64,000 bases of DNA from Auanema rhodensis (Eukaryota > Animalia > Nematoda), in assembly GCA_964057225.1 (NCBI GenBank), contig OZ059896.1, positions 18,042,001 through 18,106,000 of the forward strand, written 5' to 3'. Numbering within the stretch: the stretch's first letter is position 1; every line of letters starts with the position of its first letter. The position numbers were made by a program, and so were the translations under genes. Positions 18,942 to 55,805 of the stretch are shown in pieces. Below the pieces are notes generated by a model. That model was given only the letters and a program-made list of their open reading frames with translations. It was not told the origin of the DNA and ran no database searches.

Positions 18942-20856
<1,915 letters not shown>

Positions 20857-22059: not shown

Positions 22060-22642
22060 TTTGCCAACACAAAGATGTTACCACGTTCGATCCTAGAAGC
22101 GCTCTTCCCACAAACAAGCCCAAGCCTGGAAAGTGCAGTATAGATAGTTAGGCAGTATAAATAGTTAAGTAGTAAAACAATGAAACTAATCATTGAACAA
22201 ATCAATCATATCAGTTTCTAAAGCCACAAAAAATATTTTAAAAAATAGTCCTCATAAACGAATCATTTCATAAATAAAAATAGACAAAATCATTTTAAAT
22301 ATATTTAGAGACGCGCACGCCTCTGCTACGCAGCACGCGTTCAAATTCGTGTTGGTTCCAACATTCTGAATGGAGCACTCTAGTATTTTAATATACAAAG
22401 TGAGCAAAGTATGATTATGAGCCGTGGTAATATAACATTAAAAAAATATTTGTTAAAACTCTTATTAATATTAAGTAAACTAAACTGTTCTTTTTTTCTA
22501 TTTGTTTGATAAATGAGATGAAATGAATAATATTTTGTTGGTACCTATTCCATGTTGTAACCCTTTCATGTGAAACAAGATAAGTTTTGTTGAAATGAAC
22601 CCTCCATCTCTCACTTGAGTTACATTTACCAGCTTAGTTGTG

Positions 22643-23281
22643 CATCTGGGGCTAGTCTACCATCATCACCATCATCATCATCATCATCAGAGGAGCATCA
22701 CATCTGTATATTCCTCAGTTAATATGCCAGCGGGTATCGGAGTATTCTCGATTTGGACGTTCGAGATAGGCAGCTGGTGCTTGGGCTTGTTACTGGGCTT
22801 CAATCGTCTCTTGCTTTTCCAGCTTCGTCAACGTTGCCCGCGCTCAGGCACATCTGCATCCAGATGGTAAGAAGCACATATTGCACAACCAAATGCTCCT
22901 TGTATTCATAGATAGTCTGTCTAATTTGCAGTACAACCCCACCTTCCTCGCAGTCGTTTTTTCTGTGACTCTCTCTCAGCATTTATTGTGCCACAAAATA
23001 ATCTCTATTCGGTTCGAAAGCATGTCTATATAACCTTAAAAGAGGTGAAGTGAGAGCACATCTGCAAGATTAGTGTGGCTAGTCAAAAAAGAAGAAGAAT
23101 AACTGTTCGGTACCTCCGTAATAAAAACATCTGCTAAGTCATAGACACCTTCATATATGTATATGAACAGATGGTTTTTTCACTTCAAAAATTAGATGAA
23201 TAACACAAAAACAAAAAAAAACAAAAAGATTGATGAGAACAGCTTTACGAGTTGATCGGTAAACAGTTTTTTGATCATCTG
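22643..23281. promoter_or_regulatory. E-box cluster (candidate bHLH enhancer) 1
   Basis: CATCTG/CAGATG at 22643, 22701, 22851, 22861, 23059, 23128, 23168, 23276; CAGCTG at 22771. Confidence 0.6.
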
Positions 23282-25852
23282 CATGCCGTTAAGAGATTAG
23301 TTTGGAATTTCTCGGAAAACTAGGAAATAGGAATGAAACGTAAAAGTCGAAACAAAAGTAGCTTCATCTATAAAATAAATCTTAGTTTTAACACTCCTTT
23401 CGTATTAAACTACATATATTTGGATATTGTCATCAGTAAATATAATTAAGCAAAAGATGAGCACTCAGGTTCAAATTTTACGAATCAAAAACTTATCAAA
23501 AAATTTAATTACAACTTAGTATGTAAATTCATAAGTGAGAGATAGAACTAAGAACTTAAAAAATACTTTTGAATCTTCTTTTGTTATACCCTCATAGATA
23601 TCACTAGTATTACTATTCTTGATTTCTGTTAAATAACTTTAGTTTTTTGAATGAATAATTGAAAAGTGGGTTGAACTCATCGAACCTATTTAGGAAATTA
23701 ATACTGGTTTGCCGTGGCTAACTCTTCAGTGCATTTATAAAGAGTATGGCTGTTTTAAAGCATATATCAGAATAAAAAAACAAAATCTTAAATTATTCCC
23801 CTTGTCCTGTTCTATTTTTCAAATTTTTGTGGGCAATGTGTTTCTACGGGAATGAATTATCTCGAGTTGTTGAATGAAAATAAAATTTCAATAAGATATT
23901 GAATAGGATAGCATGACGAGTGTAGGTTCCCATGGTCGGCTATTCCTTTTAGGGCACAAGATGGTGAGAAGGCCACACAGCTGACAGCTGACAGCCCTCA
24001 GCCCTGGTGTCCTCTTCTTTCCTTTTTGCTCTGTTCTCTGCGGTTCGCCTCGTTTTACTCTCTTTGACATCATGTTCTGAGGTTCCGGCGTCGGCTGGAA
24101 CTGATGCAATCCCGTTGTCATTTTCTCGTCTTTGTGAATGAAGAAGAATGTTGATCGGGTATAAGATAGTAAATTGCAACATACACGAAAAACTAACGAT
24201 GCTAGACAAGAGTCTTTAAAACAAAACATTTCTATGTATCCTGTTTTAGCAAAATACAAAGTCTCGCGCTCCGGTAAGCGCAGCATGAAGCCATTAAAGT
24301 TAGGAAAGTTATCTTATATATGACTGAGCATGAAGGGGAAACATGAAGTTCCAACAACTACCTCGTTTTTCTCTTCTATTAAACAACAAAGCAATAATAC
24401 AGTGCAGGAAAATAGCAAATATTCATCTTGCTCTCATTATCGTTTAAGCTTTACAAAATGAAAACGTGTGATATATGAGATCATGAACCTCACCAGCATC
24501 ATCATCATGTTATTCCCTCACTTTCATGTTGTTCTCAGCTGGTGCAGCTGTTCGGAAAAGAGCGGCAAAATTGGCCTTTTATGATGATTCGTAGGACTTT
24601 ATTTGAACATTGCTAGATAGAAAATGCTCAATAAAATGACAGTTTATTGACAGTTTAGCTGGCAGGTGTGGCAATACAATGCAAATTTCATGAAGATTTC
24701 CTTAGAATTTCAGCATAATTATGCTACTTTTTACGCTTAACCAAGTTTGTTTTCATTCAAATAAGTTGATATTGTAATTTTCAAATACTGAACTAAACTG
24801 AAATATTGATATGATATGTATATAATGGAGATAAACAAAAATATTTTTAAAAAAAGTTCAATAAGATAGTATAATGCTTATGTCATTTGTTTAAATGGCT
24901 TTTATTTAAGTAAATATATAAACATTTATCTTTCAAATGATATAATCAAACTATTGTCGGTCAATAATAATTAATCGAATGAAATAATATCTTAAACACA
25001 TGTTTTTCTTCAAAAATATTTGTATTAATATTTTAATTATGTTTAATTTCTTTGTAATTATCAAAATAATACAAGCTTCTTCTAAGGGATTTAGAAAAAA
25101 AAATAATTTAAAACCAAATATTTAGTTTTTATATAATTTTTAAAACATTCATGATAAGCTTTATATGATATAACCCTTCTTGGTACTTTCGTTATGCTTT
25201 TTCAGATATATGGCAAGTTTCTGTTAATTAACTGCTATTCTATCAATCAAATGCCCATAGTGGAATAAATATCTTTAATATGTTGATGGATCTGCTGCAC
25301 CTAGATTGTCGTGATGAACCCTTCTGCTTTTCCCCAGATGAGATATATTATCGACTTATGTATTTCATATAGTTGTTCTTGACCATTGGAAAGAGAAAGG
25401 AACACTTCTGGACTTCTGATGGTGGCCATATGCGACAATGACAGACAACAGTCGGCCTATAGGTTTCTGTTCTTCAGTCTGCTCTTTCGCCTGTGGCTTC
25501 TTTGAGACCAAGCCGCTAACTGTCTGTTGCTGACAAATTATCTCAGTTTAAATATACCTGAAACTACAGTTGTTTTGTATTTCCCCCTTCAAATTGTTTT
25601 ATTAACCTACAGTTTTTTACTACTTAAAAACTGTAAAATATTGTTGTTTATTCGTTTTTGTGGTCCTTCGGATATGAGGCAAAATTCGGTGGCTTATTAG
25701 AGTACGTTCGACGTTCTGTGCTTCTGAATGGGAACCGTTTCAATATTTTAATATTCTGACTTTCGACTTCCCCCTATCTTGAATTTAGTGGGAGCTCATT
25801 GTCCAGGTTGGAATCAGAAATGAAAAGGAGGAAAAGAACAACAGAAGCTGGA

Positions 25853-28800
25853 CATCTGCCTAGTACGTCTGCCATCCGGCTGTTCCTTGTCCACTAGCCG
25901 CTAATCATCTGTCTCCCTTACAACCTTATGCTTTAAGCTAAAGAAAAGAGCACAAAATAATGCCAAATGTTGTGGTAAGTGGAGTAATAAAGCCAAAAGA
26001 GTGTATATATGTTGCACGTGTGCCGTTGTCAACGAAATAAAAACAAAAATCAGAATGTGATGTTTTAAGGACATGCACTACTTCAACATATTTCCAGCAT
26101 TTCAATACATCTGTCAGAACATAGTCTCTCACAAGCTTATTAGTATATTGAGAATAAGAATAAGTTTAACCACACATTTCATTATAGCGTGATGCTATGC
26201 TCGTCTGAATCTTTTCCTACAAGCTGGATTAATAAGTGATGCATCCAATGAAAAATGATCAACACTTTATGGCAATGATGATGAAGAAGATAACATAGTT
26301 AGATGAAGTAGCAGAAGGAAGACCTCCGAATACATACAAAAGGATGTATGAAGTAACATCAGATGGGCAGATGATGAGGCTGATGATGTATGCACATCTG
26401 ATGATTATGGCTCGAAGGTTCATTAGCGGTCTAGTCAAGTAAGTGGCTAGCTTAATTCTGCTGCGCAGAGAATGAATTGGATCAAGACGGCGTTCCTTCC
26501 GTTACCAAATCAGCCACAGATTCAGAAGACAAAGAGCAATTGAAGTCCAGCGTTTAAAATTGTAATTTGTGCTGAGATGGAATAGCATTTTAAATAGAAA
26601 TTTAATGAGCAGCCTAGAGATACGATACATGCTTTGAATCTTTCTGGTTGAGTTCGGTTCCCGCACTCGTCAGCCTACCTGTTCTCATCCATCAACTCTT
26701 CTTGCTATGCTGACTTTCAACCAGTTTCATATTCTCTCCCTGGTACCCTGTATATTTTAAACGAAGACAAGGAAGGAAAGAGCCCCTGGAAAGGGAGCCA
26801 TATGTGGCTGGCAGCTGTACACTAATTGCCAGACATGCTTGGCCCTCTTCCAGCCAGCACATGCACACTAAGCAGCAGCCGGTCGGATGACAAGCCCTTA
26901 GGGCATAAGATCCTTTAGTATTTAGCAATCTCATATAGCATGTGAGAGCAGACGTCTTGTGAGCTTAAACAGCCTATACTACGATTTCGGAAGCAGCTTC
27001 TGTTTTGAAACTGAACCATAAGCATGCACAAGAAACATACACCCATCTTCAGAGCGGTAGTGTATCAGGACCTGCTGAAGTGTCACCACAGCTGATGCGC
27101 CAATTTTAACGATAACTAGCTCATTCCCATGAATAAATTCAAGCGATGAGCAGCAAGAAAATGTAAATGTAACTAAAAATTGAGAAAATAGGCTGACTCT
27201 TCGGACATCTGGACATCATGGATAGATACGCTTGACGACCACACCAACTCCTCGGCCTTTTTAACGCCTGCTGTCTCCCGGTGCCTAAACATGATGTGAT
27301 CATAGTGCACAGGTGAGCTAAGAGACTTGCCGATATCAAACTATGGGTTCTGCCATTCAACCTGTCAAACTACATCAACCATATACGTAAACAAGCCGTC
27401 AGCAATATGATGATGATCAGATAAGTAGAATGATCGGAATTTTCTTTTTTCGGAGAAAAGAGACACATCTGCTAGGTCTCGAGTTATTAGCCAGCTGTGC
27501 GGTCTATATGTGATTGCTGCTATTCCTTCTGCTGCAACTACTGCTGCTGCGGCTGCTCATTTAGCCAAGTTAAGTGATGAAAACACACAAACACGCACAT
27601 TCAGACCACCAGCAGTGTCACCAGCCTGCTTATAAATTCATCTGCGCTTTTCATCCGTCTCAGTAGCAGCCAGTAAGCAAATAATATCATGGCAGAAGGG
27701 AGCCCGCCAGGCTGTTAGAACCCTAAGTACACCTTAAGCATGTGGAAAACATGCTCCTGTTAATGTTTAATATCATTCTGACGGGCAACATTGCAGACGA
27801 CGTCGTTTCAAGTTGTTTTCGTGCGTGTGACATCGGATTTCGAGGTCAGCAGATGCGCATTCTTCAGGTATTATCTCCTTTTTCTTTCACTAAGTGAAAG
27901 AGAAAATTGTTTTTCCATTTCAATGAACATTATGACTTATCACAAGCAATAGCATAGTAAATGAAAACGAAAACTCTGAACTGACATTGTCATCCTTCAT
28001 ACAACTATCATTGCCAAAATATCTGAAGCATTACGAGCATGCCATACAGTCGATTAGTATGATTTCCTGAGATTATGATACCTAACAAAGAAATATTCGA
28101 ATTTCCATACGTCTAAACAGAAAAAAGAATATAACAAAGAACGTAAAGATATAAACGACATGATACCCTCGTTGAAATGAAACTTCAAACATACTTCCAT
28201 GTATGTAAATGTGTCCTTCAATTTTAATTTCTTGGCGTCATCCAGATGAGGCGTCGTCATATATTCATTTTGTTTCTTCCATCCTCCCTCACCTGTCGCA
28301 ATCATCATGTGATTTCAGGTAATGATCATTTTCATTTTCATTTCAACTTTCTTTCAAACCTCCCATATCGCCTTTAAAATATTTATGACTCATTGAGAGA
28401 AATGACAACAATCTGGTCTTTTTTGGCAACTTTCCAATGGCAGATCTGAAGATGTTTCATAAACCAACAGAAAATTTCAACTATTATCTTATTGTTCTTT
28501 TACAAAAACCATGGGAACTTGACATCTGTAAGGAAGAGCAGGATGTGCCGATGCTTTTTCTTCGAATTCTACCAAATCACAGACTTCCGAGCTGTTCACT
28601 TCTTTTAGCTTTTTGACCCGACAAAGTAAAGTCAGCTGTTAAATAAGTTTCTGAGTACCACAAGATTACGTTCAGCTGTTCCGTTTCGTAGCGAAACTCT
28701 GTGACAGCTTCGCTCTTCATCGTTCCTTCTATCACAGTCAACCTTCAGGCATATAAATCTCGAATAAATCTTCATCGGGTCCCTTGCATCTCATTTTCTT

Positions 28801-29772
28801 CATCACTTGCTTTCTCTCTGTCTTCATCTTCTAATTCGTGAACATCTCTACCGAATTCTCTCTTTATTCATTTCTCTCACTCCCATTGCTGTTCCCTTAT
28901 TCTGACTCAGAAATCTGATTCATATAGCAATATATGATCCCTCTTCAACTCATCAGTAGAGAAGTAGAATGGGAAGAAGCATCTGGAACAGCTGAACCTT
29001 AAATCATTTTTTTAATATTTTCAAGAAACTACTATACCTTATTCCAAATAGACATTTGTTTCCATATGTTTCAAACAAGTTCCAGGCTTTCAGCCAAAGA
29101 ACAAACATATTTTAATGATTTTGATCAATGCTTTGTACGGAAAAGCAGGCTTGTCAATAAGATTCAACCGATTATTAACCTATTGGCTGTATAAACATAG
29201 GATTTCAACTCACCTGTTACATCGGCAATTACGTAAAAGGAAAAAGTATTCATGGATGAATAAACAAATGAACAGATGGCCCAAGTTCCGATGAAGCTCA
29301 TTCACAATGAACTGGCGCCCCCCCCCCCCTTCGGCAATGTCTTTGAATTGTGAATAGGAAGTTTCCAATTCGTTGCCATGGACTTTTACCAAGATTTACA
29401 GAATTCTTTTGATGTTTCTCAGAGTTTTCAACTGGTAATGTTGTTGAATACTGTAGCTTGAAGCTTTCCAAGTTGCAATGTGCAAACCTTAGTTTTACAT
29501 CTGTAATTATAATCATCAAGCACTATAACATCATCTTCTTCTTCATTAACGTCATCATCTGTTTTTCTTAGCAGACTGAAACAAATTGCTATTAAGATGG
29601 AAATAAGCATGACAGGTGAAGCAACAACATCTTAAGACCTTTTCGGCTTCAGCTTCAGCTGGTCCTAACATTGATTGAAGTGATGTGGATGGAGAATCAT
29701 GTGTCTTGAAGCTGATCTTAGCATTACACGTGTGAATGCTGTTAATGGTAGCTTCTAATGCTATATCATTGA

Positions 29773-29825
<53 letters not shown>

Positions 29826-30103
29826 GTGCTGTGGTACAAGGGAGGAATGGAAGGGTTTACCTTTCGTATAATGCTGATATCTATTTATTTTTATATATAT
29901 TCTAATGCAGCTGTTCAAAAGCAGGTAGAGCATAGAAGAGTTATCAAAATGGGAGAGGGCTTGAGAAGGACATCATCATGATCGTCATCTTAGCAGAGTA
30001 ATCATGTTACGAACCTTTTAGGTATCGTAGTATCGATAATCCGGCCATCAGTTAAGCTTCAGTGTATCATGTCTGCCTATAGGGTGGTATCATTTTCCAT
30101 CTG
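25853..30103. promoter_or_regulatory. Extended E-box array upstream of HLH-A
   Basis: At least 16 CATCTG/CAGATG, 8 CAGCTG and 4 CACCTG/CAGGTG counted by eye. Confidence 0.6.
29779..29822. repeat. (GA)n microsatellite
   Basis: Perfect GA run of ~22 units. Confidence 0.9.
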
Positions 30104-30683
30104 GAAGTCTGTCTCCACAGCAGTTATGACGATCAGCTTACCGTTTGTCGGTTAAAGCTCAAGCTGTTTCTCTGTAATTATCGGTAACATTAGCCAAGCT
30201 CAAAGGCTATTATCCAGTTGAATTTGCTTGAAAAGGTAATAATTTTGGGTATTATTTAAAGTCATTTTATATGATATTCTATTTGAATGTCTATCAACAT
30301 GCTTACAACATCAAAAATTATAAAAAATATTGAGAAGAGACGGCCATATTCTTTTTCAAATTGAACAGTTCCCAGTTCACAGTTTACAACTTATTCTTAT
30401 GAGGCGTGAGACATTCTCATTTCCTCCGGATATTCAGGATATCAAAGAGTTGATTGTTCATATATTGTTTATAGAAATAGATTTGTACTTTCCTCTTATG
30501 TTCACAAACTTCATTCTCACCAAATTTCTTGACAGGTTTTCCTTTTTTCTATAACTCTCTCATTTATTATATCTTTATCTAATATCTCTCTACTTCCTTA
30601 TATATTACTTACAAACTTTCCTCCTTTCTCTCTCTCTCTTTGAGCTTGCCCCACCTGTCACTCTCCTCCTCGTTTTCTCTAGG

Positions 30684-30910
30684 ATCCCGCCCTTTCTTTA
30701 ATTCTCATTCTCTACCTCTCTCCTATTCTCCTGTCTTATATCGCCTTCTTCGGACCATCGGCAATACTCTTCGCACCCAACAAAGTGGGCGTGGCTAAGC
30801 AAGAAGGGCGGAGGCCGGTCGTGTAGATCCGTCGTCGTCAGTCCGTTGTCGTACATCCTTGTTCGTTGGCTGATTTGCTCTTCTCCAGCTCTCAACTATA
30901 CTGTCAAAGA
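30684..30910 (+). promoter_or_regulatory. GC-box-rich promoter of HLH-A
   Basis: CCCGCCC, GGGCGTGGCT and GGGCGGAGG Sp/KLF-type boxes in an otherwise AT-rich context, preceded by a CT-repeat tract. Confidence 0.55.
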
Positions 30911-31013
30911 TATCTGTTATCTAATCGGATTACTCATTACTCAGAAGAAGTTTCAATAACTATTTTCTGTTTCTATTGCTATCCTTCAAAACAGTATTCA
31001 ACTTCAATTAACA

Positions 31014-31477
31014 ATGAAATCATCTCCTATTCGTTCTGCTCGTCCAGCTACTTCTCTTTCACCTAAAGGACGTGTTCGTAAGAGTTCTGAAGAACGAAAA
31101 GAAAAGTTGAAGGTATGTATTACTTCATATTCTTAATTTCAATTTCAATTTCATTTTTTTGATTCAAAATTCATTTATTTTGTTTCTTTGGCATTTTTAA
31201 TATCTAAATTTAAATTTATATTTTAATATATTTAACTAAAGAAAAATTGAATTTTCAATTACTCAGTTATTCTATCCAATTTCTAATTTTTTTTGTTTTT
31301 AAGGTCGAAGCTACATTACGTCGACTTCTTGGATCTGATGATGATTCATCTCAACTCGATGTCGTTCTCTCTGCTATTCAATACATTCGTGATCTTCAAC
31401 ACCAATTGGATTGTCATCAAGAAAATATTCTTCCATCAGGTTTTGAGCAGCTTTTTGAGAAAGCTGTTCGAACATGA
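31014..31477 (+). CDS. Small Id/extramacrochaetae-like HLH protein lacking a canonical basic region (HLH-A, 90 aa)
   Basis: Exon 1 31014-31112, intron GTATGT...TTTTAAG, exon 2 31304-31477: MKSSPIRSARPATSLSPKGRVRKSSEERKEKLK|VEATLRRLLGSDDDSSQLDVVLSAIQYIRDLQHQLDCHQENILPSGFEQLFEKAVRT*. Helix-2 signature S-x-L-D-V-V-x-x-A-I-x-Y-I-x-x-L-Q. Confidence 0.8.
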
Positions 31478-32068
31478 TTTCTCTACCATTTCTATTTCCT
31501 TTTGGAAGTTTCATGAGTTGCTCTATGAGCAAATCATCTGATCTAGCTACTTCAATCTTCACGGGTTTTATTAACAAACTGGTCTCTGTCTGTATTCTAA
31601 GAAATGGATGTTCTTGTTTGAAAATTAGTTTGTTAAAAGATTTTAATCTATGCTCTTAATCTACAAAATTTAAAATGAAGTTGTAGAATAAAAATGAAAA
31701 AAAAATTGAATGTTCTATATTATAAAATGAAAAATAAAATATTTCATCGTTAAATTTTATTATTTTTATAAAATATATACTATAAACTATATTCTTTATC
31801 AAACTTTTATTATACAATCTTATATATATATATATTCTGAATGATTTACACATATATAAATGGATATTAAGTCGGATATGCTACCTGGCGAACTGATAAT
31901 TCATAATTCTGGATGAACTAATTCAGCTTAAGCAGCAAGCTTAGTTAGGCTTGGTTCAACACTTCCGTCTTGCTTTTATTCATCTCTTAGGCTATTCATT
32001 CTATAACCCAAAATCTCAATATATCTGTAAAAGCATACGGGCCGCTACGATGATGACGACGACTGGTC

Positions 32069-42800: not shown

Positions 42801-45800
42801 GCAGCCTGTTCAGTTGAATGATTACCCTCATCTGCTAGGCTGTTTAAGATCTAAAAGACAATAAGGTTGTTTCAAGTTGCTTGTTCGTAACGATGACTAT
42901 GATGCGGATGACGATTAGCGGCATGTGATTGTCAACCGATCATTTTGAAAAGCGATTGTTGAGTTATATTGTTTGAAGAGACTTCAAAGAGTGTTTTTGT
43001 GAATGTAGTATGGTAGGTGAAAACATAATTGATCATCCATTTGCTTTTGAATATAATATGATGTACAGTGGATATAAATATAATTTTAATTAGGATAACT
43101 ATATGTGTAGTATAGAATATAATGGATAAAAGAACATACAATATCCTAGAAAGAGAGAGAGAGAGAGGGAGGGAGAGAGAGAGAGAGGAAGATCTTTGTA
43201 TACCAACATGTATCACCGGAATAAGGATAGAACGAGGTGAATGAAAAAGGAAAAAACAACATGTGAAGGGGAAGTGAGATATGGATGAGTGGGAAAGGTT
43301 GAGCAAAGAAAGAAAACCCAATTGAGATACTGTGTATGAGATGTTCCGAGAGTTCTAAAGATCTATCTTCTATATAATCAACCAAATTGCTTGTCCAATT
43401 CAAAGGAAATGAGCGAAAGAACAGCAATGATATAGATTCTATTCAACGTATTCTATTCAGTATATTCAATAAGCTATTGAAATCAAAATATGAAAAAAAA
43501 AATAAAAGAGACGGTTCATATGAATGAAGTTCAAAGGATTTTCAATCTGCTCATAGACTCAGTCCGCCTCATCAAACTCAATTTCATTTCCAATTCGGTC
43601 TTTAAACGAAAAAAGAAACCGTCCAATTAAGGTAATTCATTTCTTTGAAATCACATTCATGTTACAATTTCAATTATTAATATAAAGAAAAGAAAAAGAA
43701 GAAATATAGTTCAATAATACCGTAGTTTATAACTAAAAATTGTATTAATTGAAGGAATGAAAGTTACTATCTATCATTTTTGAAAATAAAGTCTAGAAAC
43801 TGTACAAATCTAGGTGAATACTGGCATTTCTTTTGAAATATGTCTTGAGAATTTTTTAAAATCATGATGAGAGTATATAGAAAGATAGAGAAATAGAGAA
43901 TCTGATTGACTGTCCTAATTCAATTACCTTGTGTAGTATACTATTACTACCGTATACTATGATAGATAGATAAAAACGTTTGTAATTTATGTTTTTGTAC
44001 GCTGATGAGAAAGTTTAAAACCTGTTTTACGATTGAAATAAACTTCTTCTCTTTACAGTAAGGGTCCAAGAATTATTGTTGTGATTGAAGATAGATTGAG
44101 GTAGTAGTCTCTGTAGGTCTGTCGACTTTTGTGTCCTTGAATATCCAATGAAATGAAGATGAGCTGTAAAAAAAGGAGAAAAGGCAAGCAAAAACGGTAA
44201 CGAGAGACTGAATGATTAAACGAGAGATTCAAAGAGAGGGAGAGAGATCAATGAAAAAGGATCAAGACAAATTGAATCTTTTGTTCTTGACAACCAATTC
44301 ATGTTCGAGTTGTAGTAATGCAGAGAGCATGAAGGCCATTCTATCTATACCATCGGCTTAATTTCATTTCTCTTTTACCAGTTCAATATAATATCCTGCT
44401 TAGTATCGATGTAGGTCAGTTTTATGATTTGAACTCATTTTATGCTAATTTTCACGTAACTAGGTGAATAGTAGAATCAATATACTCAAATATACTATTG
44501 GTGCCAAGAATGTGCAGAACGGTTGAAAATGCTCTCTCCTTATCTTCATATTCTGTTACCCCTTCTCTAACATTTCCTCTCTCTCTCTATCTCTCCCTCT
44601 CTTATTTTCTCTCTCTATTTCTCTTATCCTTTACTTTCTCATGACATGTTAACCTTCTCCTAAGAAAGGAGAAAGACTTGTTGACCTGTCTCTGATTATT
44701 GTATCGCTGTTGCCAAACAATCTGTGGATCCTGAATGGTTGACCCTATGCTATTGACGTACTGTTGGCTCAAAAGATAAAAAAATCTGAAAATTGTTTGC
44801 TTGAAATCCGTGAGTCAGATTCTACCGCATCAGATAGGATCTGATTCTTCTGTCTTATAGATCGTATGTGTGTGGACAGCTGGCCTCTTCAACCTATCTC
44901 GATTACACAGATTAGAGTCCAGTTTTTCATTTAATTTTTTTCTGTTTAGATTTCATTGCATTCTGATAGTACACGTCAGATTGTTCACTAAACTCAAGTA
45001 AGAATACAATGAAATACAGTCAAAGATCCAGAAGTTAAAGGAAGATATTGAAAACAATGACGATAAGGGCACAATCGGCTGTTTTAGCCTCTAGAATTTT
45101 GAAAATTTCAAAACATCGAGGTACACGCCATCAGCATACTCCATATGGATTTTGAAAATATCGCAGCCAGCCGGCCGTCAGAAGTGTCAGCTGGAATTCC
45201 TGGCATTGCTCACAGAAACTATAATGTCTTCAGGACATCTGTGAATCTCTCTTTATCTTCCCTCTGTTCAACTCTCTTGGCTCGTTCTCCTTTCGTTCTC
45301 TCTCTTCCTCTTTCAATTTGGCTCTTTATCTCTACTCTCTCAAAAGTATGTGCAAGAGAACTCGAAAGAAGTTGTGTCTGTGTGAGTTTCAATGTGAATT
45401 CTTCTGGACTATCCAGATGAGAATTAAAGACGACGACGAACATTCAATAAGAGCCACATGTTTTCACGTATGTTCATCATTGCAAAAAGTGCGAAAGAGT
45501 CCAGCTACCGGAAATTGAATAATCTTCCTGAATATGAAAAGCTGTACAACTCACTGTACTGTTTTACTTTCATCGTTCGTTCTTCTACTTTTCCTAATAG
45601 AAGGAAGAACTTCTGGTTTCACATCAAACGCTTTAAGACAATTTGATTTCTCTCTTGTCAATATTGCTTACGGCGAAGTAGCATAAGAAGAAATTCCGAT
45701 CAACATCTTCATATTGCCGACGACGTCAATCATACATGATCCAATTACCTTCAGCTCCAGGTTATAAGTCGATAATCCGAAATAGTCCCATGGGCATCGG

Positions 45801-47239: not shown

Positions 47240-48179
47240 TTAGCGTTTCTTCTCAATAGACTTTCTCTTCTTAACGCGCTGATTGCGGCGGTTATGACTG
47301 AGTACGGTAGCGGCTGGTAGGCCGGCAAGCATTTCTGAAAAAAATGAAAAATTAGGAAAACAGTTCAAGTTTAAATAGGTTTATTATATAGTTTTGGGCA
47401 TATATTTGTAGTTAAATTTGGGTTTAGTAAGAAGATTATAAGGAAAAAGGTCATCTGATATTGAATATCGTTACGAAGGTAGATGAAACTGAATAGAATT
47501 GAGGCAAAGAAGGGTTAAAAGTGGTTGAGAAGAATAGGAGTGTGAGTAGAAAACGAGAGAAGAATGACCTCGAACTAGCTGATCAGCAAGAAAGTTTCAT
47601 CTAAGAGGTCTAATCGAGATAACGACTTAATTGCAACCTTGTCCCCTCTCAGAGTATGAGCTACGGGAAATGGTAGTAATCCGTCTGATTTTAAAAATAA
47701 AAGCAAACTGTATAGTGGATGACAAAAAAATTGAAGAAAAACCAAAACAAGTGAAGACGACTGAAGTCGTTGTTTGGAATTGAAACATCCCCCCATTACG
47801 ATAAAAAACTGTGAACAAAAAAGAAAAAAAGAAGAGGAATAGAGTGAATATCATGGGAAAATGAAAATATTAAAGGATATTTTGTAAAAAGAGAAGATAT
47901 TGTTTGAAAGAAAAACTTAAAATTACCTCTGGGAAGAGATCCTTTTTGGACACGAGCAATGATGGTGGCTTCAAGTTGTTGGATGTAATCGACAGCATTT
48001 AGAAGCATATCGGTAGCATTCTTGTTAGCTGGTGATGGTGGAAGTAAAGCTGATAGACGACGTAGTTCAATCTGTTCGGCACGTGTAAGGGCTGGAACTC
48101 GTTGAGCTTCACGTGCTTGGGCTTTGAATGAAGTAGTTTGGATGGATGGCTTAGAAGTCTTAGGACTTGGCTTAGGCAT
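47240..48179 (-). CDS. Second small emc/Id-like HLH protein lacking a canonical basic region (HLH-B, ~115 aa)
   Basis: Exon 1 48179-47927, intron GTAATT...TTTCAG, exon 2 47334-47240: MPKPSPKTSKP...LTRAEQIELRRLSALLPPSPANKNATDMLLNAVDYIQQLEATIIARVQKGSLPR|EMLAGLPAATVLSHNRRNQRVKKRKSIEKKR*. Confidence 0.8.
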
Positions 48180-48249
48180 CGTGATGAGAGTTTCGACGAG
48201 TTAGAATACAACGACGATAGATATCCGGCTTCAGACAATAAATTTGTCT

Positions 48250-48530
48250 GAGTTGACAGTGGTTGAGAGCGAACGAGGTGTTGGCAGTCGAGGTGAGACT
48301 CGAATTGACGAAGGTCGAAAGAATGTGGGAGGGGCAGATCAGATCTGAAGGAGGCGGGGCTTAACGCGGGGTGGGGAGGAAGAGCAAGGGTGGGCTGGTC
48401 GTCGGCAAGTGCAATTGCTTTGATACCGTTACAGACAGATATTAATGTAAATAACTGTATAAATGAAGGAGAGGCAGGTAGAGAGAGAGAGAGAGATTGA
48501 AAGAGAGAAAGAGAGAGAGAGAGATTGGGA
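48250..48530 (-). promoter_or_regulatory. GC-box-rich promoter of HLH-B
   Basis: GGCGGGGC, GGGGTGGGG, GGGTGGGCT and GGGAGGGG (+ strand reading) at 48326-48396, followed further upstream by a GA/CT repeat at 48480-48524. Confidence 0.55.
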
Positions 48531-51500
48531 GGGTTAGAAAGAAGGTGAATTACTCATTTCATCAAAAAAGGAAATAATACCAAGAGATGTTATTCCCAAC
48601 CCTTATTACCGTGGGAAAATAATCTTATAAGATAAACCTTTCCTCAGATCGTATTGATTGTAGATAAAGATAAAGAAAATATACTCCTTGTCTCGTCTAC
48701 TAAATAGCTTCAAATGATTCCAAAATATTTTATTTACGAAATCGAACGAATATTCAAATTTTTCCGGGAATTTAAGGTAAAATGAATGTTAGAACAGTTG
48801 TTCAATCTCTATACCAAGAGTATACTTCATCTAATTTGAAGCAATAAATTCCAAATGAACGTTCAACATTCAGTATACAAGATTTTGCTAGCAACTGTTC
48901 TTGACGTGAAGAAACTAGCAAATCACTTTCTGATCACCATATAAGAAAATGACCTGAGGCAATACGATGAGAGAAAAACATAAATTATCTGAAAGAAAGA
49001 TTGAAGATGATTGTCAGTATTGTACAATTCATTTATCTTCATTCATGAAGCTTCTGTCTCAATTGCCTCTGTCAACGTGTCTGACAGCTTTATATACACA
49101 GATTTCAATTTAATTAAAATTTTGTATTTTATTCATTGTCTTCAACTTAAATATCAATTTGTCTTATAAAATTCAAGCATTATAGAGATTTTAATCAGTT
49201 AATTTCTCATAGTAAAAATAAAAAAGTTAATTATACAATCACGAGAAAAATACATAATATAACCAAAACTAAGAGATTTTATTTATATTTTAATCTTATA
49301 ACTATATCTACTGTAATCATGAGAATATTTTAAATGTATTACTATATACCATATCATTCATAGATAAAAAGTTCACAAAGAATCAAAGAAATATGAAGAG
49401 AAAGAGAGAGAAAGAGAACAGAGAACAGAGTTAGAAAGAGATCTAACAAAGGTTACAGATCATTTGTCTATGTATAGATGTAATAAATCATCTTATTAAC
49501 TATATCTATAGTTAGTTATTTAGTTAATTATGTATTTTTTATAATTTATATTCTTGAACTAGTACATATAGAAAGCATTATTGTCATTAAAACTTCTTTT
49601 CTTACCTGGATTAGAATGGCTCGCAGACACATACACAGACAAGAATATCCAGGTAAACAATAAACAAAAAGAAAAAAAAGGTTCTAAATCTCCAACTAAA
49701 TAAACAATTGGTTATATAATCCATATGTCAATCAGCTTTTATTTCATTTTAGGCCACACCTGTTTTTTTCTTTTCCAAACTTAGTAAAAACGGATATGGA
49801 TTGACTCAACTTTTAAAAGAAAATAGATGGAAGTTGGGAGAGAGACGACCTATTCACAAGATTCTGATTGACCTTATCCGGAACAAACTTTATTAGGCCT
49901 ATTGGCATAAAGCCAATAGGAATGTTCATGTTCTTGCCTTACTTGTTCACACTTTTTATTCTTCAATATTCACAACCTCTAATGAATTAGGCGAGAATAT
50001 AAATTGAGGGAACGATGTATGAGTTGTATCTCAGTTGAGATTACATATTGTTCATTCTAGAAGGCTTTATCTGCTGTTCTTACTTGTATTCGTTTTTCTT
50101 TCCATTCACCTGTAAAATTTACATATAAAGCATGGAACATCTGCTACAACCTTATATAGTAGGCAATGTTTGAAGGAGAAGCTTTTGATTTGAACTCATT
50201 TAAAGGTATTCCGACAACAGTTCAAGTGGACAGCTTAGATGGGGTAGGTATCAAGCAATTCTCTAACAAATTCCTTAATGGGGGTTAAAGCCATTTGATA
50301 TCTACGGCAGATTCTTTGCCATCTCTTATTCTGTCTTCAAGATGGTTGATGATGATGATGTACTTATCGTCTGTTTATTCAGAGCGGCACTTATAGCTAA
50401 TGTCACAAAGCCCTATAACAGCATATCCATACAAGTGATGCACAAGACATTACGATGACAATCTGAAAACGCCAGCTGAGCAAGTTCTTCCTTTCCGTTT
50501 GTTCTCTCACACTTTTTCCGCTTTTATTGGTTTTTCTCTCTCTTTATGAAAGCGTTGGTTACCGCAAATCATTAAAAAATTGTCTTGTAGGTCAGATATA
50601 CATAGAACGATGTACTTCAGATGATGTCTTCATTCAAGTTATGTGTGAAAGTAAAGTTTTCCGCCATAAGTTGTAGATTCCCATTTTAGAAGAACGAAAG
50701 ACTGGCTCAGACATCCAAGAAAAAGCTGAGAATTCACAGAGTAATGTAGCATTACAAACCAGATTGTTGTTGTGCTGTTTGTTGATATTGCTATGAACAT
50801 ATTTCGAAAGTTCTGGTTAACATCGTGTGTTCGTTAAGATGGAACGAGAGTTAGAAGTATGTGTATGTATGCTGAAGTACGTATGTGGCTGAAAAAGCAC
50901 ATCTGGATCGGCAACTGTCGTCAATAAACGACACCGATGTCCATATGTCCAGCATAGGAACCCACGTTCGTCTGACAGTTTTCGTGTGTTTGTGTGAGTA
51001 TAAATGTAAGAAAAACGACGAAGATGTCAGATAATAGAGACAATTTCTTGAAGAACTGTATGCTTAATGTATCTCAACTGTCTAAAGTTTATTGTGTGGA
51101 TTTGGAACTATGTGTGCTCATACTCATAGTTCGAACGAATATTTTTGAGAGATTGAGGATGAATTCAAATCAATCAACCAGAAGATAATAGTTATACAAG
51201 TCATTTAATACGGTAATTCATTTAATTAGGTTAACTCATGAGTCAGAAGACAAGGATTAAATAGAAAACTTTTTAGTCAAGGTCATATATCACTATGGTA
51301 TTCTTTCTTTCATATCTTCAATTTCCTTTTTTTTTTATTCAATGAATATTAATTTTACATTTAATTTATCCTAATTACAATATTATTTATTATTTTTATT
51401 TATTATTAAAATATCGAAAAAGGATCAGAAATAGGAATTAATATATTCATTTCAAATAAAAAAAAATACAACTTTTTCCATTTAATCTTCTACTCTACTT

Positions 51501-54500
51501 AATATTTTTTATATAATTATCTTATATTCCTAGATGATTGTATAGAATACCACGAGAATACATGAAATTCTTTGTCAAGAAAAGCTGAAATATGAAATAA
51601 GTAAACGACAAATCTCAGCAGGAGGTTGATGAGGATGATGTGTCATGATCAGATGAGGCAATTTATGAAAAATTTGCATAAAATTCAATCGAGATGACAG
51701 ACAGATAGGTTAGATGGACGAACCAGAAGCCAGAAGACATTTATCGTCCTGTTGCCATCTAGTTATGCTTGGTGAAATCACAATACTAAACTGAAGGAGG
51801 CAAGAATAAGCAAAAAGTCAAGGATTTTCATCTAAATTAAAGATGAATAATCAGCGAAAAACCATAATAAGATGTCATGAAACCTATAATTGCATAGAAT
51901 TTTAGAGGAAAAAAAGAAAAAAATTCGAAGATTGTTGTAGAAAAAGAAAAAGATTAAGGGATAAGCGTTAGATCTTTTACATCTTTTATATTTCAACTTG
52001 AATATTATATAGTAGATTCATTGGTCAGTAATTACAAATTGTATTCGATTCATACTAATTATATGTCGGTATTTACTACTGTATCTTGTTTCTCTAACCT
52101 AGAATATCTAAAAACTATTGAAATGTAGTTCGAACAGCTGGCACATTCATCTTCATTCATTCAGCTAACCTTTCATCAAGTAGATTTGCGCGAAATATAG
52201 GATACAAATGAAAGTACTTTCTATATTAAATTAAATATTTTGTTACAAAGTAATATGAATTTATAAAGTTTTTTTTAATTTAAAAGAAAAGGTTTAGCAA
52301 GTTTCAAGTTTTAACTGAACTACAAGTACTGTAGAAGAGGACGATTTATTCAGTTATAGGTATGATTGGTTTATAAAATCATTTAAATTTCCATTTAAGC
52401 TTTAAAGAAACTTCTTTATTTTTCTTTTATTTGAAAAAAAAGAATTATTTACTCATATATAGATAGATAATAACTGTATAAACATTAATTAATCTAAACG
52501 GAAGCTATTATATTTGTTATCGGATTAGAGCCAAACTGTAGCAAAAAAAACGGAACATCAAATAAGATGCCGCTAATTGCTCAAGGTGTTTCAGATGCCT
52601 TTCTTGCGTTCTATCTCTTTTCGGTTCGAATCCAATCCAATCTGTTTAATCTCTATCTTACATCATATAGATATTGGCTCAAGGGCTTAACCTGTCCGGA
52701 TACTGACTAACCTTTCAAGTTCGTTACTCTACCGAAAACCCAGTGGCAAATGCTATTAGATTACATGTTCATGTGCATCTGATAGTCGATGAGAAAGTTT
52801 TAAAATAACCGGGGGAATTACTGATTAAAGTTTATCAAAAAGAAGTTACGTTCGAGGATGTAATAATCAGATATAGAATTAAGAATGGAATTTAGAAAAT
52901 ATCAAAGTCTGGCTACAACATATCAACTTAAAATAATTGTGATTAAATTAATATTAATGAGTTAATATAAGTAATTATAACTTCAAAATAAGTATAAATC
53001 TTTCTGTTTGACATGAACTAAACACATATACAGCCTTCAAGCATTTTCTATATTTTTCGGATGCTTGGAAGCGTATTTTCTGGCATGTGGTCAAGTAATT
53101 AGTCAAGTGATACTTCACCTAATCGACGTCATACCATATTCGGTAAATGTATTGAATATATGTCTAAAAGTCTCTTATATTCATTATGCATGGATATCTG
53201 TTCTCGGTGGTTCTGCTCTTTTGAGAAAAGTGTGTCTGGTCAGCCGTTCGTTTGATGTTTACCGTCTTCAAGTGTTTCAGGAACCTTTTGTTTCATCATC
53301 ACCAACCACATCCTCATCATAATCACCAGTCGTCGTCAACATAACGGTCATCATATTCACTTGCCTCTTCTTCTTTTCTTTCAGCTCATACATATGGAAA
53401 AGCCGATAGACAGATGAGCAGATGGTCAAATTTGGCACAAAAAAAAAGCGAAAAAGGATAAGAGCAGCTATGTGTCTGAAAGGAAGGAAAACACCAAAAA
53501 AATGCCGCAAAACCGACAGCCAGGTACAACAAGGGGATACGAATGTGATCCTCATCCGCATAACAGACGAACAATTGCTATAGCATAACAGCACATGCTC
53601 TCATTACCTTCTGACGGCATTTATAAGGATGAAATGATCAAAATTCAATACCTATATACATAGTATATCCTTGACTAATTAGAGTATATTCAATGACATT
53701 AATTATATTTTTTTCTTTAATTCGTTTTACCCAAAATATATTATTTTCTTAAAACAGGAAATAGGGAAAAATTACGGAATAGACATATATGAGCGGGACT
53801 AGATAACTATAACTAACAATCACATAATTATATGTACATGTTAATGTAATCTTGAAGTTTTATACAATATTCCATATATCAGCTAATTTTTCTTAAATTT
53901 CATTGTCAATTGATATGAGACAATCGGTGGCTTGAAAAATGTTTTATGTGGATGACGTCATCGTTTTGTTTTTGAAATGGTTATGGATGCCGACATGAGC
54001 GTTATAGAAGATATTGAGCAATAAGTTGTAAACAATCTAGCAAAATGACATATAAAACCATAGAACCCTATAAGGTTAAAAGAGAAAAAAGAAAGAGCAG
54101 CTGCCAATTTTATCTCATAATTTCGTTGTCTGTATGTTGTTTATGTCGCAATGTTTCAAAGAAAAAAAACATAAACATATACTGTTATATGATATTTCTA
54201 ATATTGAAATATGTATTATTATATCTTAAACTTGAATAGAGAATAATATTATATAATAAACGAGTTTTATAAGCTATCCATATAGCAGCAGCATAATTCA
54301 CATGTTCTTTTGGTTGCAACATGTGCTAGTGATGCTGGATCATAGATGTATGACACCTAAAAGAATTGCCGAAAAATGATTTGATTGGCCTGGTATTATT
54401 CTTTTTTTTATTAATTTTTCCTTTATCTCTTGTCCTATTTCATCTTTTTGTTCCTAAATTGGTCTGAACTCATCAGTCAGCCTGCATACAGCGATGTTGC

Positions 54501-55805
54501 GTCATCACCTCTCTATAGGCTGTATGGTATTGCAGACAAATCAGAAAACGTGTGTTGAACGTATTAACCAATTGAACGGTTACATCCAAGGATTTTCAGG
54601 CACCCTGCTGGCTAACAAAACCGGCTGAGGAACAGTTGGAATACAGTTAGATGAAGAACTACCGCAACCTGAAACATGGCATTCCATAAACGAAATTGAC
54701 ATCTCAACGAAACAAATCGGCTTCAAATTCAACCTCGATGTTCGTTCTTCAATGCATGCCACACAAAGTGATGTTCAATTATACTTTGCGGCTGAATATT
54801 TTGTGTGAAAGGGACCGGTATTGTATCGTTTAAGCCAAAGAACAAAACCAATCTACACAACTAAGGAAGATTCTATTTTTTGTTTTTCACATTGCATAAT
54901 AGACTACTTTGATTAAATAGATGTTTATATTGAAAGTAAGGAAAACCTTAGGAAAACTTTTATTGACTCTCGCTTATAAACTCCCCCCCCCCTTCTCAAT
55001 ATCATTACTCGTCTCTCAAAGAACCTGAAAGAATTGTTCACAAGTGTCTTAGAGTGTGAAACCAAAAAGTTGAAAGTTAATCAGGACAGCAGAAGACTCA
55101 TGTGACTCTTTCTTCACCTTATTTATCATTCCAATATTAAGGTGAAATGACCGTGAACGATTAAAATTAAACGATAAGACATTGAGTTGTACCATTTCCT
55201 GTTGAGCTAATAACAGAGCAGAAGGTGACTTCACGATTAGTTGATTCACTAGTTGCTATATTAGGTAATTATTCTAGGGATTACGTCATCCTACACATGT
55301 AGCGATGATAGCACGGTTGACCGGCCCCATGCATTTCCATATAGTTAATTGCATAGTCATTACAATGAATATAATCATTACCGGAAATATAGCAAATGTT
55401 AAAAAATTTATAAAAAATCTAACAAAGATAAAGATATAGTAGTTATAATAAATATAATTATGTTGGTTGTAGCTTAAGCATTAACCTGACAAGGGAATTT
55501 CTATAGATTATGCAATTTAAAAATCCATACTCGTCGTGTTAAACCAAATGTAAAAAATGCGAGTCTAAACTAAAGTTTTAAATGAAGAAAGTTAATAAAA
55601 GATGATTAAAGAACATTTCAAGTAAAAAAACCAACTAAAACAATAATTAAGTATAAAATTCCGAGAAGTAAAATCGATAATTCGCAGTTTCTTTGCACTA
55701 TGCTTGATTTAAAAATCTCTAGACCCGATAAATAGAAATGAAAACGAATAAATTACAATTAAGCTCATTATGTATATATACATATCACAAAAATCACATA
55801 CGTAT

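What the first reader, a model, noticed from the sequence alone, without database searches (positions are those of the whole stretch)
22060..55805. Candidate nematode Id/emc-like locus: two basic-less HLH genes alone in a 34-kb E-box-saturated gene desert (putative E-protein negative-feedback module)
Seen: the flanking genes are tightly packed (intergenic gaps of a few hundred nt, ~50-nt introns), yet between plp-1 and rabs-5 I find only two ~100-aa HLH genes, facing each other. The surrounding non-coding DNA carries many dozens of CAGATG/CATCTG, CAGCTG and CACCTG E-boxes in GC-richer islands. Known: class V HLH proteins (vertebrate Id1-4, Drosophila Emc) lack the basic region, sequester E-proteins (E2A/Daughterless; HLH-2 in C. 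elegans) and are transcriptionally induced by them. To my knowledge no Id/emc orthologue is recognised in C. elegans. Inference: this is a divergent nematode Id/emc-type system whose large cis-regulatory landscape reads out bHLH (HLH-2 plus proneural/myogenic partner) activity and feeds back to inhibit it.
Basis: partly seen in the sequence, partly recalled or inferred. Interest (0 to 1): 0.9.

Follow-up and report, generated by a model that had tools for sequence, protein, structure and literature searches.

The report
Basic-less HLH gene in conserved nematode desert
A 34-kb gene-poor stretch of an Auanema-type nematode genome holds the counterpart of the unstudied C. elegans gene Y65A5A.1, a small helix-loop-helix protein with no DNA-binding basic region. 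Conserved E-box-rich non-coding elements surround it, so it is a testable candidate for the Id-like bHLH inhibitor that nematodes are thought to lack.

Summary
Between plp-1 (start 22059, - strand) and rabs-5 (from 55806) I find two small two-exon genes and no other conserved coding sequence.

- **E-boxes.** CAGATG/CATCTG occurs 63 times (17 expected) and CAGCTG 25 times (4 expected). After simple repeats these are the most over-represented hexamers. The flanks show no CAGATG or overall CANNTG excess.
- **Conservation.** 27 collinear non-coding blocks are shared with Auanema sp. JU1783. E-boxes are three times denser inside them and are kept intact 71% of the time, against 39% for hexamers in general.
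- **HLH-B (48179-47240, -).** It is a clear orthologue of a nematode-wide family of about 120-aa proteins. One source names a member "Y65A5A.1", after the C. elegans gene. The family keeps the HLH dimer-interface residues, has an acidic LSxEE motif where the basic region should be, and adds a long helix 2, an NGSLP motif and a basic C-terminal tail. It sits in gene-poor DNA in several other nematodes.
- **HLH-A (31014-31477, +).** It is only weakly supported as a diverged paralogue and is not confirmed as a real gene.
- **Id/Emc.** No test showed specific Id/Emc orthology. Id-like inhibition and E-box feedback remain inference.
- **RNA.** No RNA data could be obtained.

The scan's earlier notes on this locus all come from this same window, not from other DNA.

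The parts
31014..31112 (+). HLH-A exon 1 (33 codons, MKSSPIR...; mixed basic/acidic stretch KGRVRKSSEERKEKLK)
   Evidence: ATG, open frame and GTATGT donor read. No such product is on record in the gene collection.
31304..31477 (+). HLH-A exon 2 (57 codons plus stop; end of helix 1, loop, helix 2 with AIQYIRDLQ, then NILPSG)
   Evidence: Best non-HLH-B hit of the HLH-B family HMM among 2122 six-frame segments of the window (E 0.13). hhalign against the family: local probability 70%, P 4e-5. AF2 single-sequence model: helices 25-42, 48-72 and 78-89. No Pfam or PDB HLH hit.
47927..48179 (-). HLH-B exon 1 (84 codons: N-terminal tail, acidic LTRAEQ in place of a basic region, helix 1, loop, long helix 2, GSLPR)
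   Evidence: 71% identical to Auanema sp. JU1783 protein P0001. Family hits at E 1e-16 to 1e-10. AF2 with a 38-sequence alignment: helices 33-45 and 55-79, mean pLDDT 79.
47240..47334 (-). HLH-B exon 2 (31 codons plus stop; ends in the basic tail KKRKSIEKKR)
   Evidence: Spliced frame. tblastn to JU1783 at 68% identity. The tail is conserved in clade IV and V members.
47555..47644 (.). Conserved block inside the HLH-B intron
   Evidence: 83% identity to JU1783.
48180..48509 (-). HLH-B promoter and 5' leader, conserved with JU1783; (CT)n tract just upstream
   Evidence: Alignment block 47909-48509; sequence read.
22060..31013 (.). Densest E-box field, upstream of HLH-A (26 CAGATG/CATCTG, 13 CAGCTG, 70 CANNTG in 8.95 kb)
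   Evidence: z = 9.2 and 8.0; 0 of 300 shuffles reach the observed counts.
32062..33665 (.). Three conserved non-coding blocks just downstream of HLH-A, each with 3-4 E-boxes identical in JU1783
   Evidence: for example CACCTG, CATCTG and CATATG at 32069-32123.
38942..45475 (.). Series of conserved non-coding blocks between the two genes (up to 97% identity while coding DNA is about 70%)
   Evidence: The best-conserved blocks show no miRNA-like fold.
49650..55398 (.). Conserved non-coding blocks between HLH-B and rabs-5
30888..30907 (+). Shared 5' element GCTCTCAAC(N1-3)ACTGTCAA, copy upstream of HLH-A (126 nt before the ATG)
48253..48270 (-). Same element upstream of HLH-B (91 nt before the ATG); not conserved in JU1783

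Best explanation
The region is the Auanema version of a gene-poor regulatory landscape around the orthologue of C. elegans Y65A5A.1.

HLH-B encodes a protein of about 115 aa. Its helix 1 (ELRRLSALLP) and helix 2 (LLNAVDYIQQL) carry the canonical HLH dimer-interface residues. An acidic L(S/T)xEE motif occupies the positions that contact DNA in bHLH factors. Helix 2 runs on for two more turns and ends in NGSLP. The protein ends in a basic, NLS-like tail.

HLH-A, 16 kb away and convergent, is probably a strongly diverged paralogue.

The non-coding DNA is a set of enhancers packed with constrained CAGATG and CAGCTG E-boxes. These are the sites preferred by heterodimers of the E protein with proneural, Twist or myogenic partners (that preference is my own background knowledge of bHLH site preferences, not tested here).

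Inferred mechanism: bHLH activators switch these genes on. The basic-less product then pairs with a bHLH partner (HLH-2 or a class II factor) to form a dimer that cannot bind E-boxes. That would give Id-like negative feedback without Id/Emc ancestry being demonstrable.

Shown: gene structure, family membership of HLH-B, absence of a basic region, the desert, the conserved blocks, and E-box excess and constraint.

Inferred: dimer partners, inhibition, feedback, and that HLH-A is expressed.
For: - Family: 41 representatives with E <= 1e-3, all 59-202 aa. The 24 that carry a source name are all from nematodes of clades III, IV and V; 13 carry no name and 4 were not looked up. One is named 'Protein Y65A5A.1'.
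- Invariant columns are L42, P47, Y65, I66, L69 and G80. The alignment shows LSxEE where the basic region should be.
- The family profile hits only HLH proteins at the top of the PDB list: Pho4 0.012, MYC2 0.023, ID-1 0.028, USF 0.1, MyoD 0.17.
- The AF2 model is helix-loop-helix, and its top Foldseek rows are MITF, TFE3, USF2, MYC2, TCF4 and ID-1.
- The orthologue is the only called gene within +-10 kb in Pristionchus and Heligmosomoides, and in Mesorhabditis as far as the contig reaches (10 kb upstream, about 8 kb downstream). It is nearly alone in C. remanei.
- 27 collinear non-coding blocks are shared with JU1783 at 69-97% identity, while coding DNA is about 70%.
- E-boxes: excess; 14.4/kb inside blocks against 4.9/kb outside; 71% fully conserved against 39% for all hexamers, P 5e-6.
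- HLH-A.
Against: - No expression data. The four sequencing runs that hold the locus are tiny and not on record as RNA, and read laying laid nothing.
- Every family member falls below Pfam's HLH threshold; only 4 of 38 reach E < 1.
- Foldseek E-values are about 1.
- HLH-A has no independent HLH support, and its conservation in JU1783 could not be examined.
- The CAGATG/CAGCTG excess is not seen around the orthologues in C. remanei, C. auriculariae, Mesorhabditis, Pristionchus or Heligmosomoides. Only CACCTG is raised, in two of them.
- No interaction or DNA-binding evidence exists.
Confidence: 0.5

Rival explanations
1. The two genes are true but extremely diverged orthologues of Id/Emc (bHLH group D).
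For: - No basic region.
- ID-1 is among the top PDB profile hits at E 0.03.
- HLH-A helix 2 ends in YIRDLQ, as human Id1 does in the supplement of PMC1828162.
- From memory, untested: the HLH-A N-terminus resembles the Id2/Id3 SPVR start.
- C. elegans is counted as having no Emc member, so the slot is empty.
Against: - No protein named Id or Emc appears among the 41 hits from 1.84 billion representatives, and every named hit is a nematode protein.
- ID-1 scores no better than Pho4, MYC2 or USF, and ID-2 scores lower.
- HLH-A alone hits no Id chain at E <= 10.
- The family signature (ATVxARVxNGSLP plus a basic tail) is absent from the Id HLH strings seen.
- The long helix 2 gives HLH-zipper proteins as the best fold matches.
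Confidence: 0.12
2. HLH-B is a target of proneural, mesodermal or other bHLH factors but is not their inhibitor. It might act as an obligate positive partner or an adaptor for another complex. It might also bind nucleic acid through its basic C-terminal tail. The E-boxes would then only reflect where it is expressed.
For: - The conserved long helix 2, NGSLP motif and KKRKSIEKKR tail are features that Id proteins do not need.
- The E-box types are not conserved across nematodes.
- C. elegans gene lists show Y65A5A.1 in E-lineage, Q-neuroblast and memory data sets, with no bHLH phenotype attached.
Against: In animals and plants, HLH proteins that keep the interface and lose the basic region usually act as dominant negatives (Id, Emc, PRE/ILI; background knowledge). 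Two family members give weak hits to the plant ILI model.
Confidence: 0.28
3. HLH-A is not a functional gene. It would be a chance ORF pair or a decayed duplicate, and the desert would hold a single HLH gene.
For: - No record of the product.
- No homologue by word search.
- No Pfam, PDB or fold match.
- Family HMM score of 10.6 bits, barely above the best of 2000 shuffles.
Against: - It is the top non-HLH-B segment of 2122 in the window for the family HMM.
- hhalign P 4e-5.
- Clean ATG, splice sites and frame.
- The predicted helices have the same lengths and the same N-x-LP stop as HLH-B.
- It shares a 5' element with HLH-B.
- The densest E-box field flanks it.
Confidence: 0.25
4. The E-box excess is a by-product of base composition or of a repeat family.
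For: The desert is rich in (GA)n/(CT)n and poly-C tracts.
Against: - Order-1 and order-3 Markov expectations and dinucleotide shuffles are all exceeded.
- The site contexts are diverse.
- The excess recurs in JU1783: CAGCTG ranks 4 and CAGATG ranks 10.
- The sites are selectively conserved.
Confidence: 0.03

Closest known systems
C. elegans Y65A5A.1 and its nematode orthologues (UniProt automatic name 'BHLH domain-containing protein'; for example C. remanei CRE_20912/GCK72_012269)
   Same: HLH-B shares the whole architecture: N-terminal tail, LSxEE, ELRRLSxxLP, loop ending in DP, xxAxxYIxQLxATVxARVxNGSLP, and the basic C-terminal tail. Read-through ends after LPxG in mis-called members suggest an intron at that same point. 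The chromosome IV-type neighbourhood (plp-1, rabs-5, with hlh-30 on the same piece) and the gene-poor setting also match.
   Different: Nothing essential. Auanema has an extra candidate paralogue (HLH-A) and a much stronger CAGATG/CAGCTG load. I could not fetch the C. elegans protein itself. The link rests on a source's name for the Aphelenchus member and on synteny.
Id1-4 / Drosophila Extramacrochaetae (class V, group D HLH)
   Same: Small proteins with an HLH, no basic region and a generic helix-2 pattern (xIxYIxxLQ). The locus is loaded with E-boxes, which fits induction by E-protein dimers.
   Different: No specific sequence affinity. The family has a longer helix 2, the NGSLP motif and a basic tail. 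Binding to E proteins is untested.
Plant PRE/ILI/KIDARI atypical HLH proteins (Pfam PF23174)
   Same: About 90-aa HLH-only proteins that inhibit bHLH partners. They are weak feature and HMM neighbours.
   Different: A different kingdom, with only marginal scores. This is an analogy of design, not kinship.
bHLH-zipper factors (MITF/TFE3, USF, Pho4, Cbf1)
   Same: Best structural and PDB-sequence neighbours, because helix 2 continues as a long helix.
   Different: Those proteins have a full basic region with Glu9/Arg10/Arg12-13 and a long zipper. HLH-B has neither.

Membership tests
Nematode Y65A5A.1 small-HLH family | Full-length similarity, including LSxEE, ELRRLSxxLP, YIxQLxATVxARVxNGSLP and the basic C-tail | tested here: met
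   HLH-B: hits at E 3.6e-16 to 1e-10 to Caenorhabditis, strongylid and Heterorhabditis members; alignment.
Nematode Y65A5A.1 small-HLH family | The same similarity, tested for HLH-A | tested here: inconclusive
   hmmsearch 10.6 bits, above all 2000 shuffles. hhalign local probability 70%. Rank 2 of 2122 window segments at E 0.13.
HLH superfamily (Pfam PF00010) | Score at or above Pfam's gathering threshold | tested here: not met
   HLH-B scores 12.6 bits against a cut-off of 20.7. Only 4 of 38 family members reach E < 1. HLH-A has no hit.
HLH superfamily (Pfam PF00010) | Helix-loop-helix fold with conserved interface residues (Leu23, Pro28, helix-2 A..YI..L) | tested here: met
   For HLH-B: invariant L42, P47, Y65, I66 and L69. 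AF2 helices 33-45 and 55-79. The top PDB profile hits are all HLH proteins. The Foldseek top rows are bHLH proteins but not significant. Not established for HLH-A: no HLH match by Pfam, PDB sequence or fold.
Id/Emc (class V) | No DNA-contacting basic region (no Glu9, Arg10 or Arg12/13) | tested here: met
   HLH-B family: those positions hold variable or hydrophobic residues followed by an acidic EE (Cbf1 alignment). HLH-A is ambiguous. One register puts E27/R28 at positions 9/10, but Glu at positions 8 and 12 (my reading).
Id/Emc (class V) | Specific sequence kinship with the Emc/Id HLH | tested here: not met
   No protein named Id or Emc among the 41 hits. ID-1 at E 0.03 is no better than Pho4 or MYC2. 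HLH-A hits no Id chain.
Id/Emc (class V) | Heterodimerises with E proteins and blocks their DNA binding | not testable with these tools
   Needs yeast two-hybrid or co-IP, EMSA, or a multimer prediction with HLH-2.
Id/Emc (class V) | Transcription driven by E-protein dimers through E-boxes | tested here: inconclusive
   E-boxes are enriched and constrained in the two Auanema loci but not around the orthologues elsewhere. Occupancy is untested.

The most novel reading that the evidence does not exclude
Nematodes did not lose class V HLH function. The Y65A5A.1 family would be their Id equivalent: a basic-less HLH that titrates HLH-2 and/or class II partners. It would sit in a conserved enhancer desert and, at least in Auanema, be wired to E-box input as a negative-feedback loop, with a lineage-specific second copy (HLH-A).
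Probability: 0.3. Interest if true: 0.8.

Novelty: new variant of a known kind. Interest (0 to 1): 0.6.

Why it matters
A bHLH census counts no Emc/Id member in C. elegans (PMC1828162 supplement). Work on HLH-2 has had to explain how E-protein activity is limited without one.

A conserved, basic-less HLH family with a C. elegans member would make that question directly testable in the model worm, by mutants, two-hybrid assays with the 40-odd bHLH proteins, and ChIP. In the searchable literature that member appears only in gene lists. I did not find it in the bHLH census or in the held supplement text of a C. elegans transcription-factor interaction study.

The locus is also a clear nematode example of a vertebrate-style regulatory desert. 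Its non-coding blocks are better conserved than the coding sequence, and its E-boxes are demonstrably constrained.

Tried and rejected
**RNA evidence**
- The look-up of sequencing runs gave only four tiny runs of one study. None is on record as RNA.
- Local offline scripts did read the whole window file, including those 41 bases, for counts and for alignments to loci already fetched. From then on the 41 bases were masked.

**HLH-A relatives**
- The word search found none.
- The product is not on record.
- There are no Pfam, PDB or fold matches.
- tblastn in six orthologous loci found only the HLH-B orthologues themselves as weak hits.
- The JU1783 locus I could fetch ends a few hundred bases short of where HLH-A should lie, and no search was left to reach further.

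**Other checks**
- GATA-like 12-mer shared by both promoters: not conserved in JU1783, so dropped.
- Conserved blocks as miRNA or structured RNA: no convincing folds, and no Rfam or tRNA hits.
- Deep non-coding conservation with Caenorhabditis: none.
- A typed panel of bHLH family sequences for a formal phylogeny was left out, to avoid pasting many sequences.


Full report
**1. What is in the sequence**

Two small genes lie between plp-1 and rabs-5.
- plp-1 has its first exon at 22059-21920 on the - strand.
- rabs-5 is a FYVE/Rbsn protein that aligns from 55813.
- HLH-A is on the + strand: exon 1 31014-31112, a 191-nt intron with a GTATGT donor and an AAG acceptor, exon 2 31304-31477, 90 aa.
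- HLH-B is on the - strand: exon 1 48179-47927, a 592-nt intron, exon 2 47334-47240, 115 aa.
- The two genes are convergent.

Nothing else in the 34 kb looks like a gene.
- The ten longest remaining ORFs have no Pfam hit.
- Six-frame pieces compared with the related locus show coding-type conservation only for HLH-B.
- Rfam and tRNA scans are empty.

**2. The E-box claim holds**

| Motif in 22060-55805 | Observed | Order-1 expectation | Order-3 expectation |
|---|---|---|---|
| CAGATG/CATCTG | 63 | 17 | 27 |
| CAGCTG | 25 | 4 | 11 |

- These two rank 4 and 5 of all 2080 hexamer pairs, behind (GA)n and poly-C.
- Dinucleotide-preserving shuffles never reach the observed counts upstream of HLH-A (26 and 13 sites in 8.95 kb; z = 9.2 and 8.0). 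They also never reach them between the genes.
- The left flank shows no excess. The right flank shows none for CAGATG or overall CANNTG, but CAGCTG is raised there (6 against 0.8).
- The site contexts differ from one another, so they are not copies of one repeat.

**3. A related locus shows that the non-coding DNA is functional**

HLH-B has one close relative, P0001 of Auanema sp. JU1783, at 71% identity. Its locus L001 has rabs-5 and a nuclear-receptor gene in the same order.

- 27 collinear non-coding blocks match between window 32-55 kb and L001 at 69-97% identity. The coding DNA matches at only about 67-72%.
- CANNTG density is 14.4/kb inside these blocks and 4.9/kb outside.
- 35 of 49 non-coding E-boxes inside blocks are identical in both species, against 39% of hexamer positions in general (binomial P 5e-6).
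- Several blocks carry three or four conserved E-boxes within 50-100 bp.
- The most conserved blocks do not fold like miRNA precursors.
- CAGCTG and CAGATG are also over-represented in the JU1783 non-coding DNA, at ranks 4 and 10.

I read the desert as an enhancer landscape with constrained bHLH sites.

**4. What HLH-B is**

A profile of HLH-B plus P0001 was scored against 1.84 billion representative proteins. It found 41 proteins at E <= 1e-3, all 59-202 aa long. The 24 that carry a source name are all from nematodes; 13 carry no name and 4 were not looked up.

| Clade | Genera found |
|---|---|
| V | Caenorhabditis, Ancylostoma, Heligmosomoides, Heterorhabditis, Angiostrongylus, Pristionchus, Mesorhabditis |
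| IV | Bursaphelenchus, Aphelenchus, Aphelenchoides, Steinernema, Strongyloides, Ditylenchus, Heterodera, Acrobeloides |
| III | Gnathostoma (two copies), Anisakis, Syphacia |

- The Aphelenchus record is named 'Protein Y65A5A.1', which points to that C. elegans chromosome IV gene as the orthologue.
- The C. remanei member lies on CM021147.1. From memory of that assembly's accession order (not checked with a tool) this is chromosome IV.
- plp-1 and rabs-5 flank HLH-B in the window. From background knowledge these are chromosome IV genes in C. elegans.
- UniProt's automatic name for many members is 'BHLH domain-containing protein'.

The alignment shows these features:
- Invariant L42, P47, Y65, I66, L69 and G80. 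These include bHLH positions Leu23 and Pro28 and the helix-2 YI..L core.
- A conserved L(S/T)xEE motif in place of Arg10, Arg12 and Arg13.
- A conserved extension, ATVxARVxNG(S/T)LP.
- A basic tail in many members (KKRKSIEKKR here).
- Several mis-called members that read through after LPxG, which suggests an intron at that point across the family.

**5. Is HLH-B an HLH, and is it an Id?**

- Pfam's HLH model stays below threshold: 12.6 bits against 20.7, and only 4 of 38 members reach E < 1.
- The family profile against PDB sequences puts only HLH proteins at the top: Pho4 0.012, MYC2 0.023, ID-1 0.028-0.041, USF 0.1, MyoD 0.17, ID-2 0.19. The two-sequence profile hit yeast Cbf1 at 0.009, with the HLH aligned and the basic region unmatched.
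- AlphaFold2 with the 38-sequence alignment gives helix 33-45, a loop, and helix 55-79 (mean pLDDT 79).
- The Foldseek top rows are MITF, TFE3, USF2, MYC2, TCF4, CLOCK-BMAL1 and ID-1, but none is significant.
- Protein-language-model neighbours are nematode small proteins and, further off, plant ILI/PRE HLH-only proteins.

The HLH fold without a basic region is therefore well supported. No protein named Id or Emc appeared in the large search, and ID-1 is not favoured over unrelated bHLH groups. Id/Emc orthology is not supported. Likeness in function is a separate question and stays open.

**6. HLH-A is much weaker**

Against it:
- No homologue by word search.
- No gene record.
- No Pfam HLH hit.
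- No HLH chain in the PDB, and no fold match.

For it:
- The HLH-B family HMM ranks its exon 2 first among the 2120 non-HLH-B six-frame segments of the window. That is ahead of the true second exon of HLH-B (E 0.13).
- The full protein scores 10.6 bits, above all 2000 shuffles.
- hhalign gives 70% local probability (P 4e-5) over residues 22-80. It aligns SSEER with LSxEE, and NILPSG with NGSLPxG.
- The single-sequence model has helices 25-42 and 48-72. Helix 2 has the same 25-residue length as in HLH-B.
- ESM features place it next to HLH clusters and to the same nematode cluster as HLH-B.
- Both genes share a 5' element, GCTCTCAAC(N1-3)ACTGTCAA, about 100 nt before the ATG. It is not conserved in the JU1783 HLH-B promoter.

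Its putative 'basic' stretch is mixed (KGRVRKSSEERKEKLK). In one register Glu27/Arg28 fall at bHLH positions 9/10, but Glu then occupies positions 8 and 12. A canonical DNA-binding region is unlikely, though not excluded.

**7. The desert is conserved; the E-box flavour is not**

| Species (locus) | Other called genes near the orthologue | E-box finding |
|---|---|---|
| Mesorhabditis spiculigera (L004) | none in 10 kb upstream and about 8 kb downstream (contig end) | CACCTG 22 against 5.8 expected |
| Pristionchus entomophagus (L005) | none within +-10 kb | no excess |
| Heligmosomoides polygyrus (L006) | none within +-10 kb | no excess |
| C. remanei (L002) | two tiny genes within +-10 kb | CACCTG 16 against 4.5 expected |
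| C. auriculariae (L003) | neighbours 4-5 kb away | no excess |

None of these loci shows the CAGATG/CAGCTG excess. The strong CAGATG/CAGCTG load is therefore an Auanema feature. It is densest around HLH-A.

**8. Literature**

- The bHLH census of Simionato et al. lists 0 Emc members among 39 C. elegans bHLH genes, and its files do not mention Y65A5A (PMC1828162 supplement).
- Y65A5A.1 occurs in three searchable papers, only in gene lists: a conserved intergenic G/C tract, Q-neuroblast transcriptomes in mab-5 mutants, and early E-lineage and memory gene sets.
- I did not find it in the held supplement text of a C. elegans protein-DNA interaction study.

**9. Mechanism**

Shown: a conserved HLH-only protein, a conserved regulatory desert, and constrained E-boxes.

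Inferred from how Id, Emc and plant PRE proteins work: the protein dimerises with a bHLH partner and yields a complex that cannot bind DNA. In Auanema, E-box-binding dimers drive its transcription, which closes a negative loop. I put about 0.5 on the overall reading, about 0.35-0.45 on the inhibitory step, and about 0.12 on true Id/Emc ancestry.

**10. Limits**

- No RNA evidence could be obtained.
I worked beside them and sent no letters of them to any search tool afterwards. Offline scripts that read the whole window file before I masked those bases are listed under Tried and rejected.
- The C. elegans protein itself and the JU1783 sequence at the HLH-A position were out of reach.

Noticed in passing
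window 33920-34207 and 34608-34895: A perfect 288-nt inverted repeat with a 400-nt spacer. The spacer carries a conserved E-box block (34352-34507) that aligns to JU1783 in the opposite orientation to all neighbouring blocks. The arms themselves have no match in JU1783. This is either a recent inversion or foldback element, or an assembly artefact.
   Followed up: partly
window 30888-30907 (+) and 48270-48253 (-): Both small genes carry GCTCTCAAC(N1-3)ACTGTCAA about 100 nt before the ATG. The element is absent from the JU1783 HLH-B promoter. It may be a trace of a duplication or a shared start-site element.
   Followed up: partly
window 29777-29825, 38258-38310, 39914-39966, 43147-43190, 44570-44622, 45939-45991, 48479-48530: Many (GA)n/(CT)n tracts are scattered through the desert, one just upstream of each HLH promoter. 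Poly-C/G runs are also in excess (17 CCCCCC against 1 expected). A published list notes a G/C tract next to Y65A5A.1 that is shared with C. briggsae.
   Followed up: no
window about 19100-20600 (- strand): Exons of a MYST-type histone acetyltransferase (motif ...[16 protein letters not shown]...) lie next to plp-1.
   Followed up: no
proteins P0022, P0023, P0025, P0041 (unnamed Logan/ENA contigs): A subgroup of the family has an arginine-rich stretch (RRALLRRIQRQELRKLQ) before helix 1 but no Glu at bHLH position 9. The source organisms are unknown. They could mark the family's range outside Rhabditida.
   Followed up: no
L002 (C. remanei) and L004 (Mesorhabditis spiculigera): CACCTG, the E-protein/ZEB/Snail-type box, is 3.5-4 times over-represented around the orthologue in these two species only.
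   Followed up: partly
window 55806-64000: CAGCTG is over-represented in the right flank too (6 against 0.8 expected), inside or near the rabs-5 and nuclear-receptor genes.
   Followed up: no
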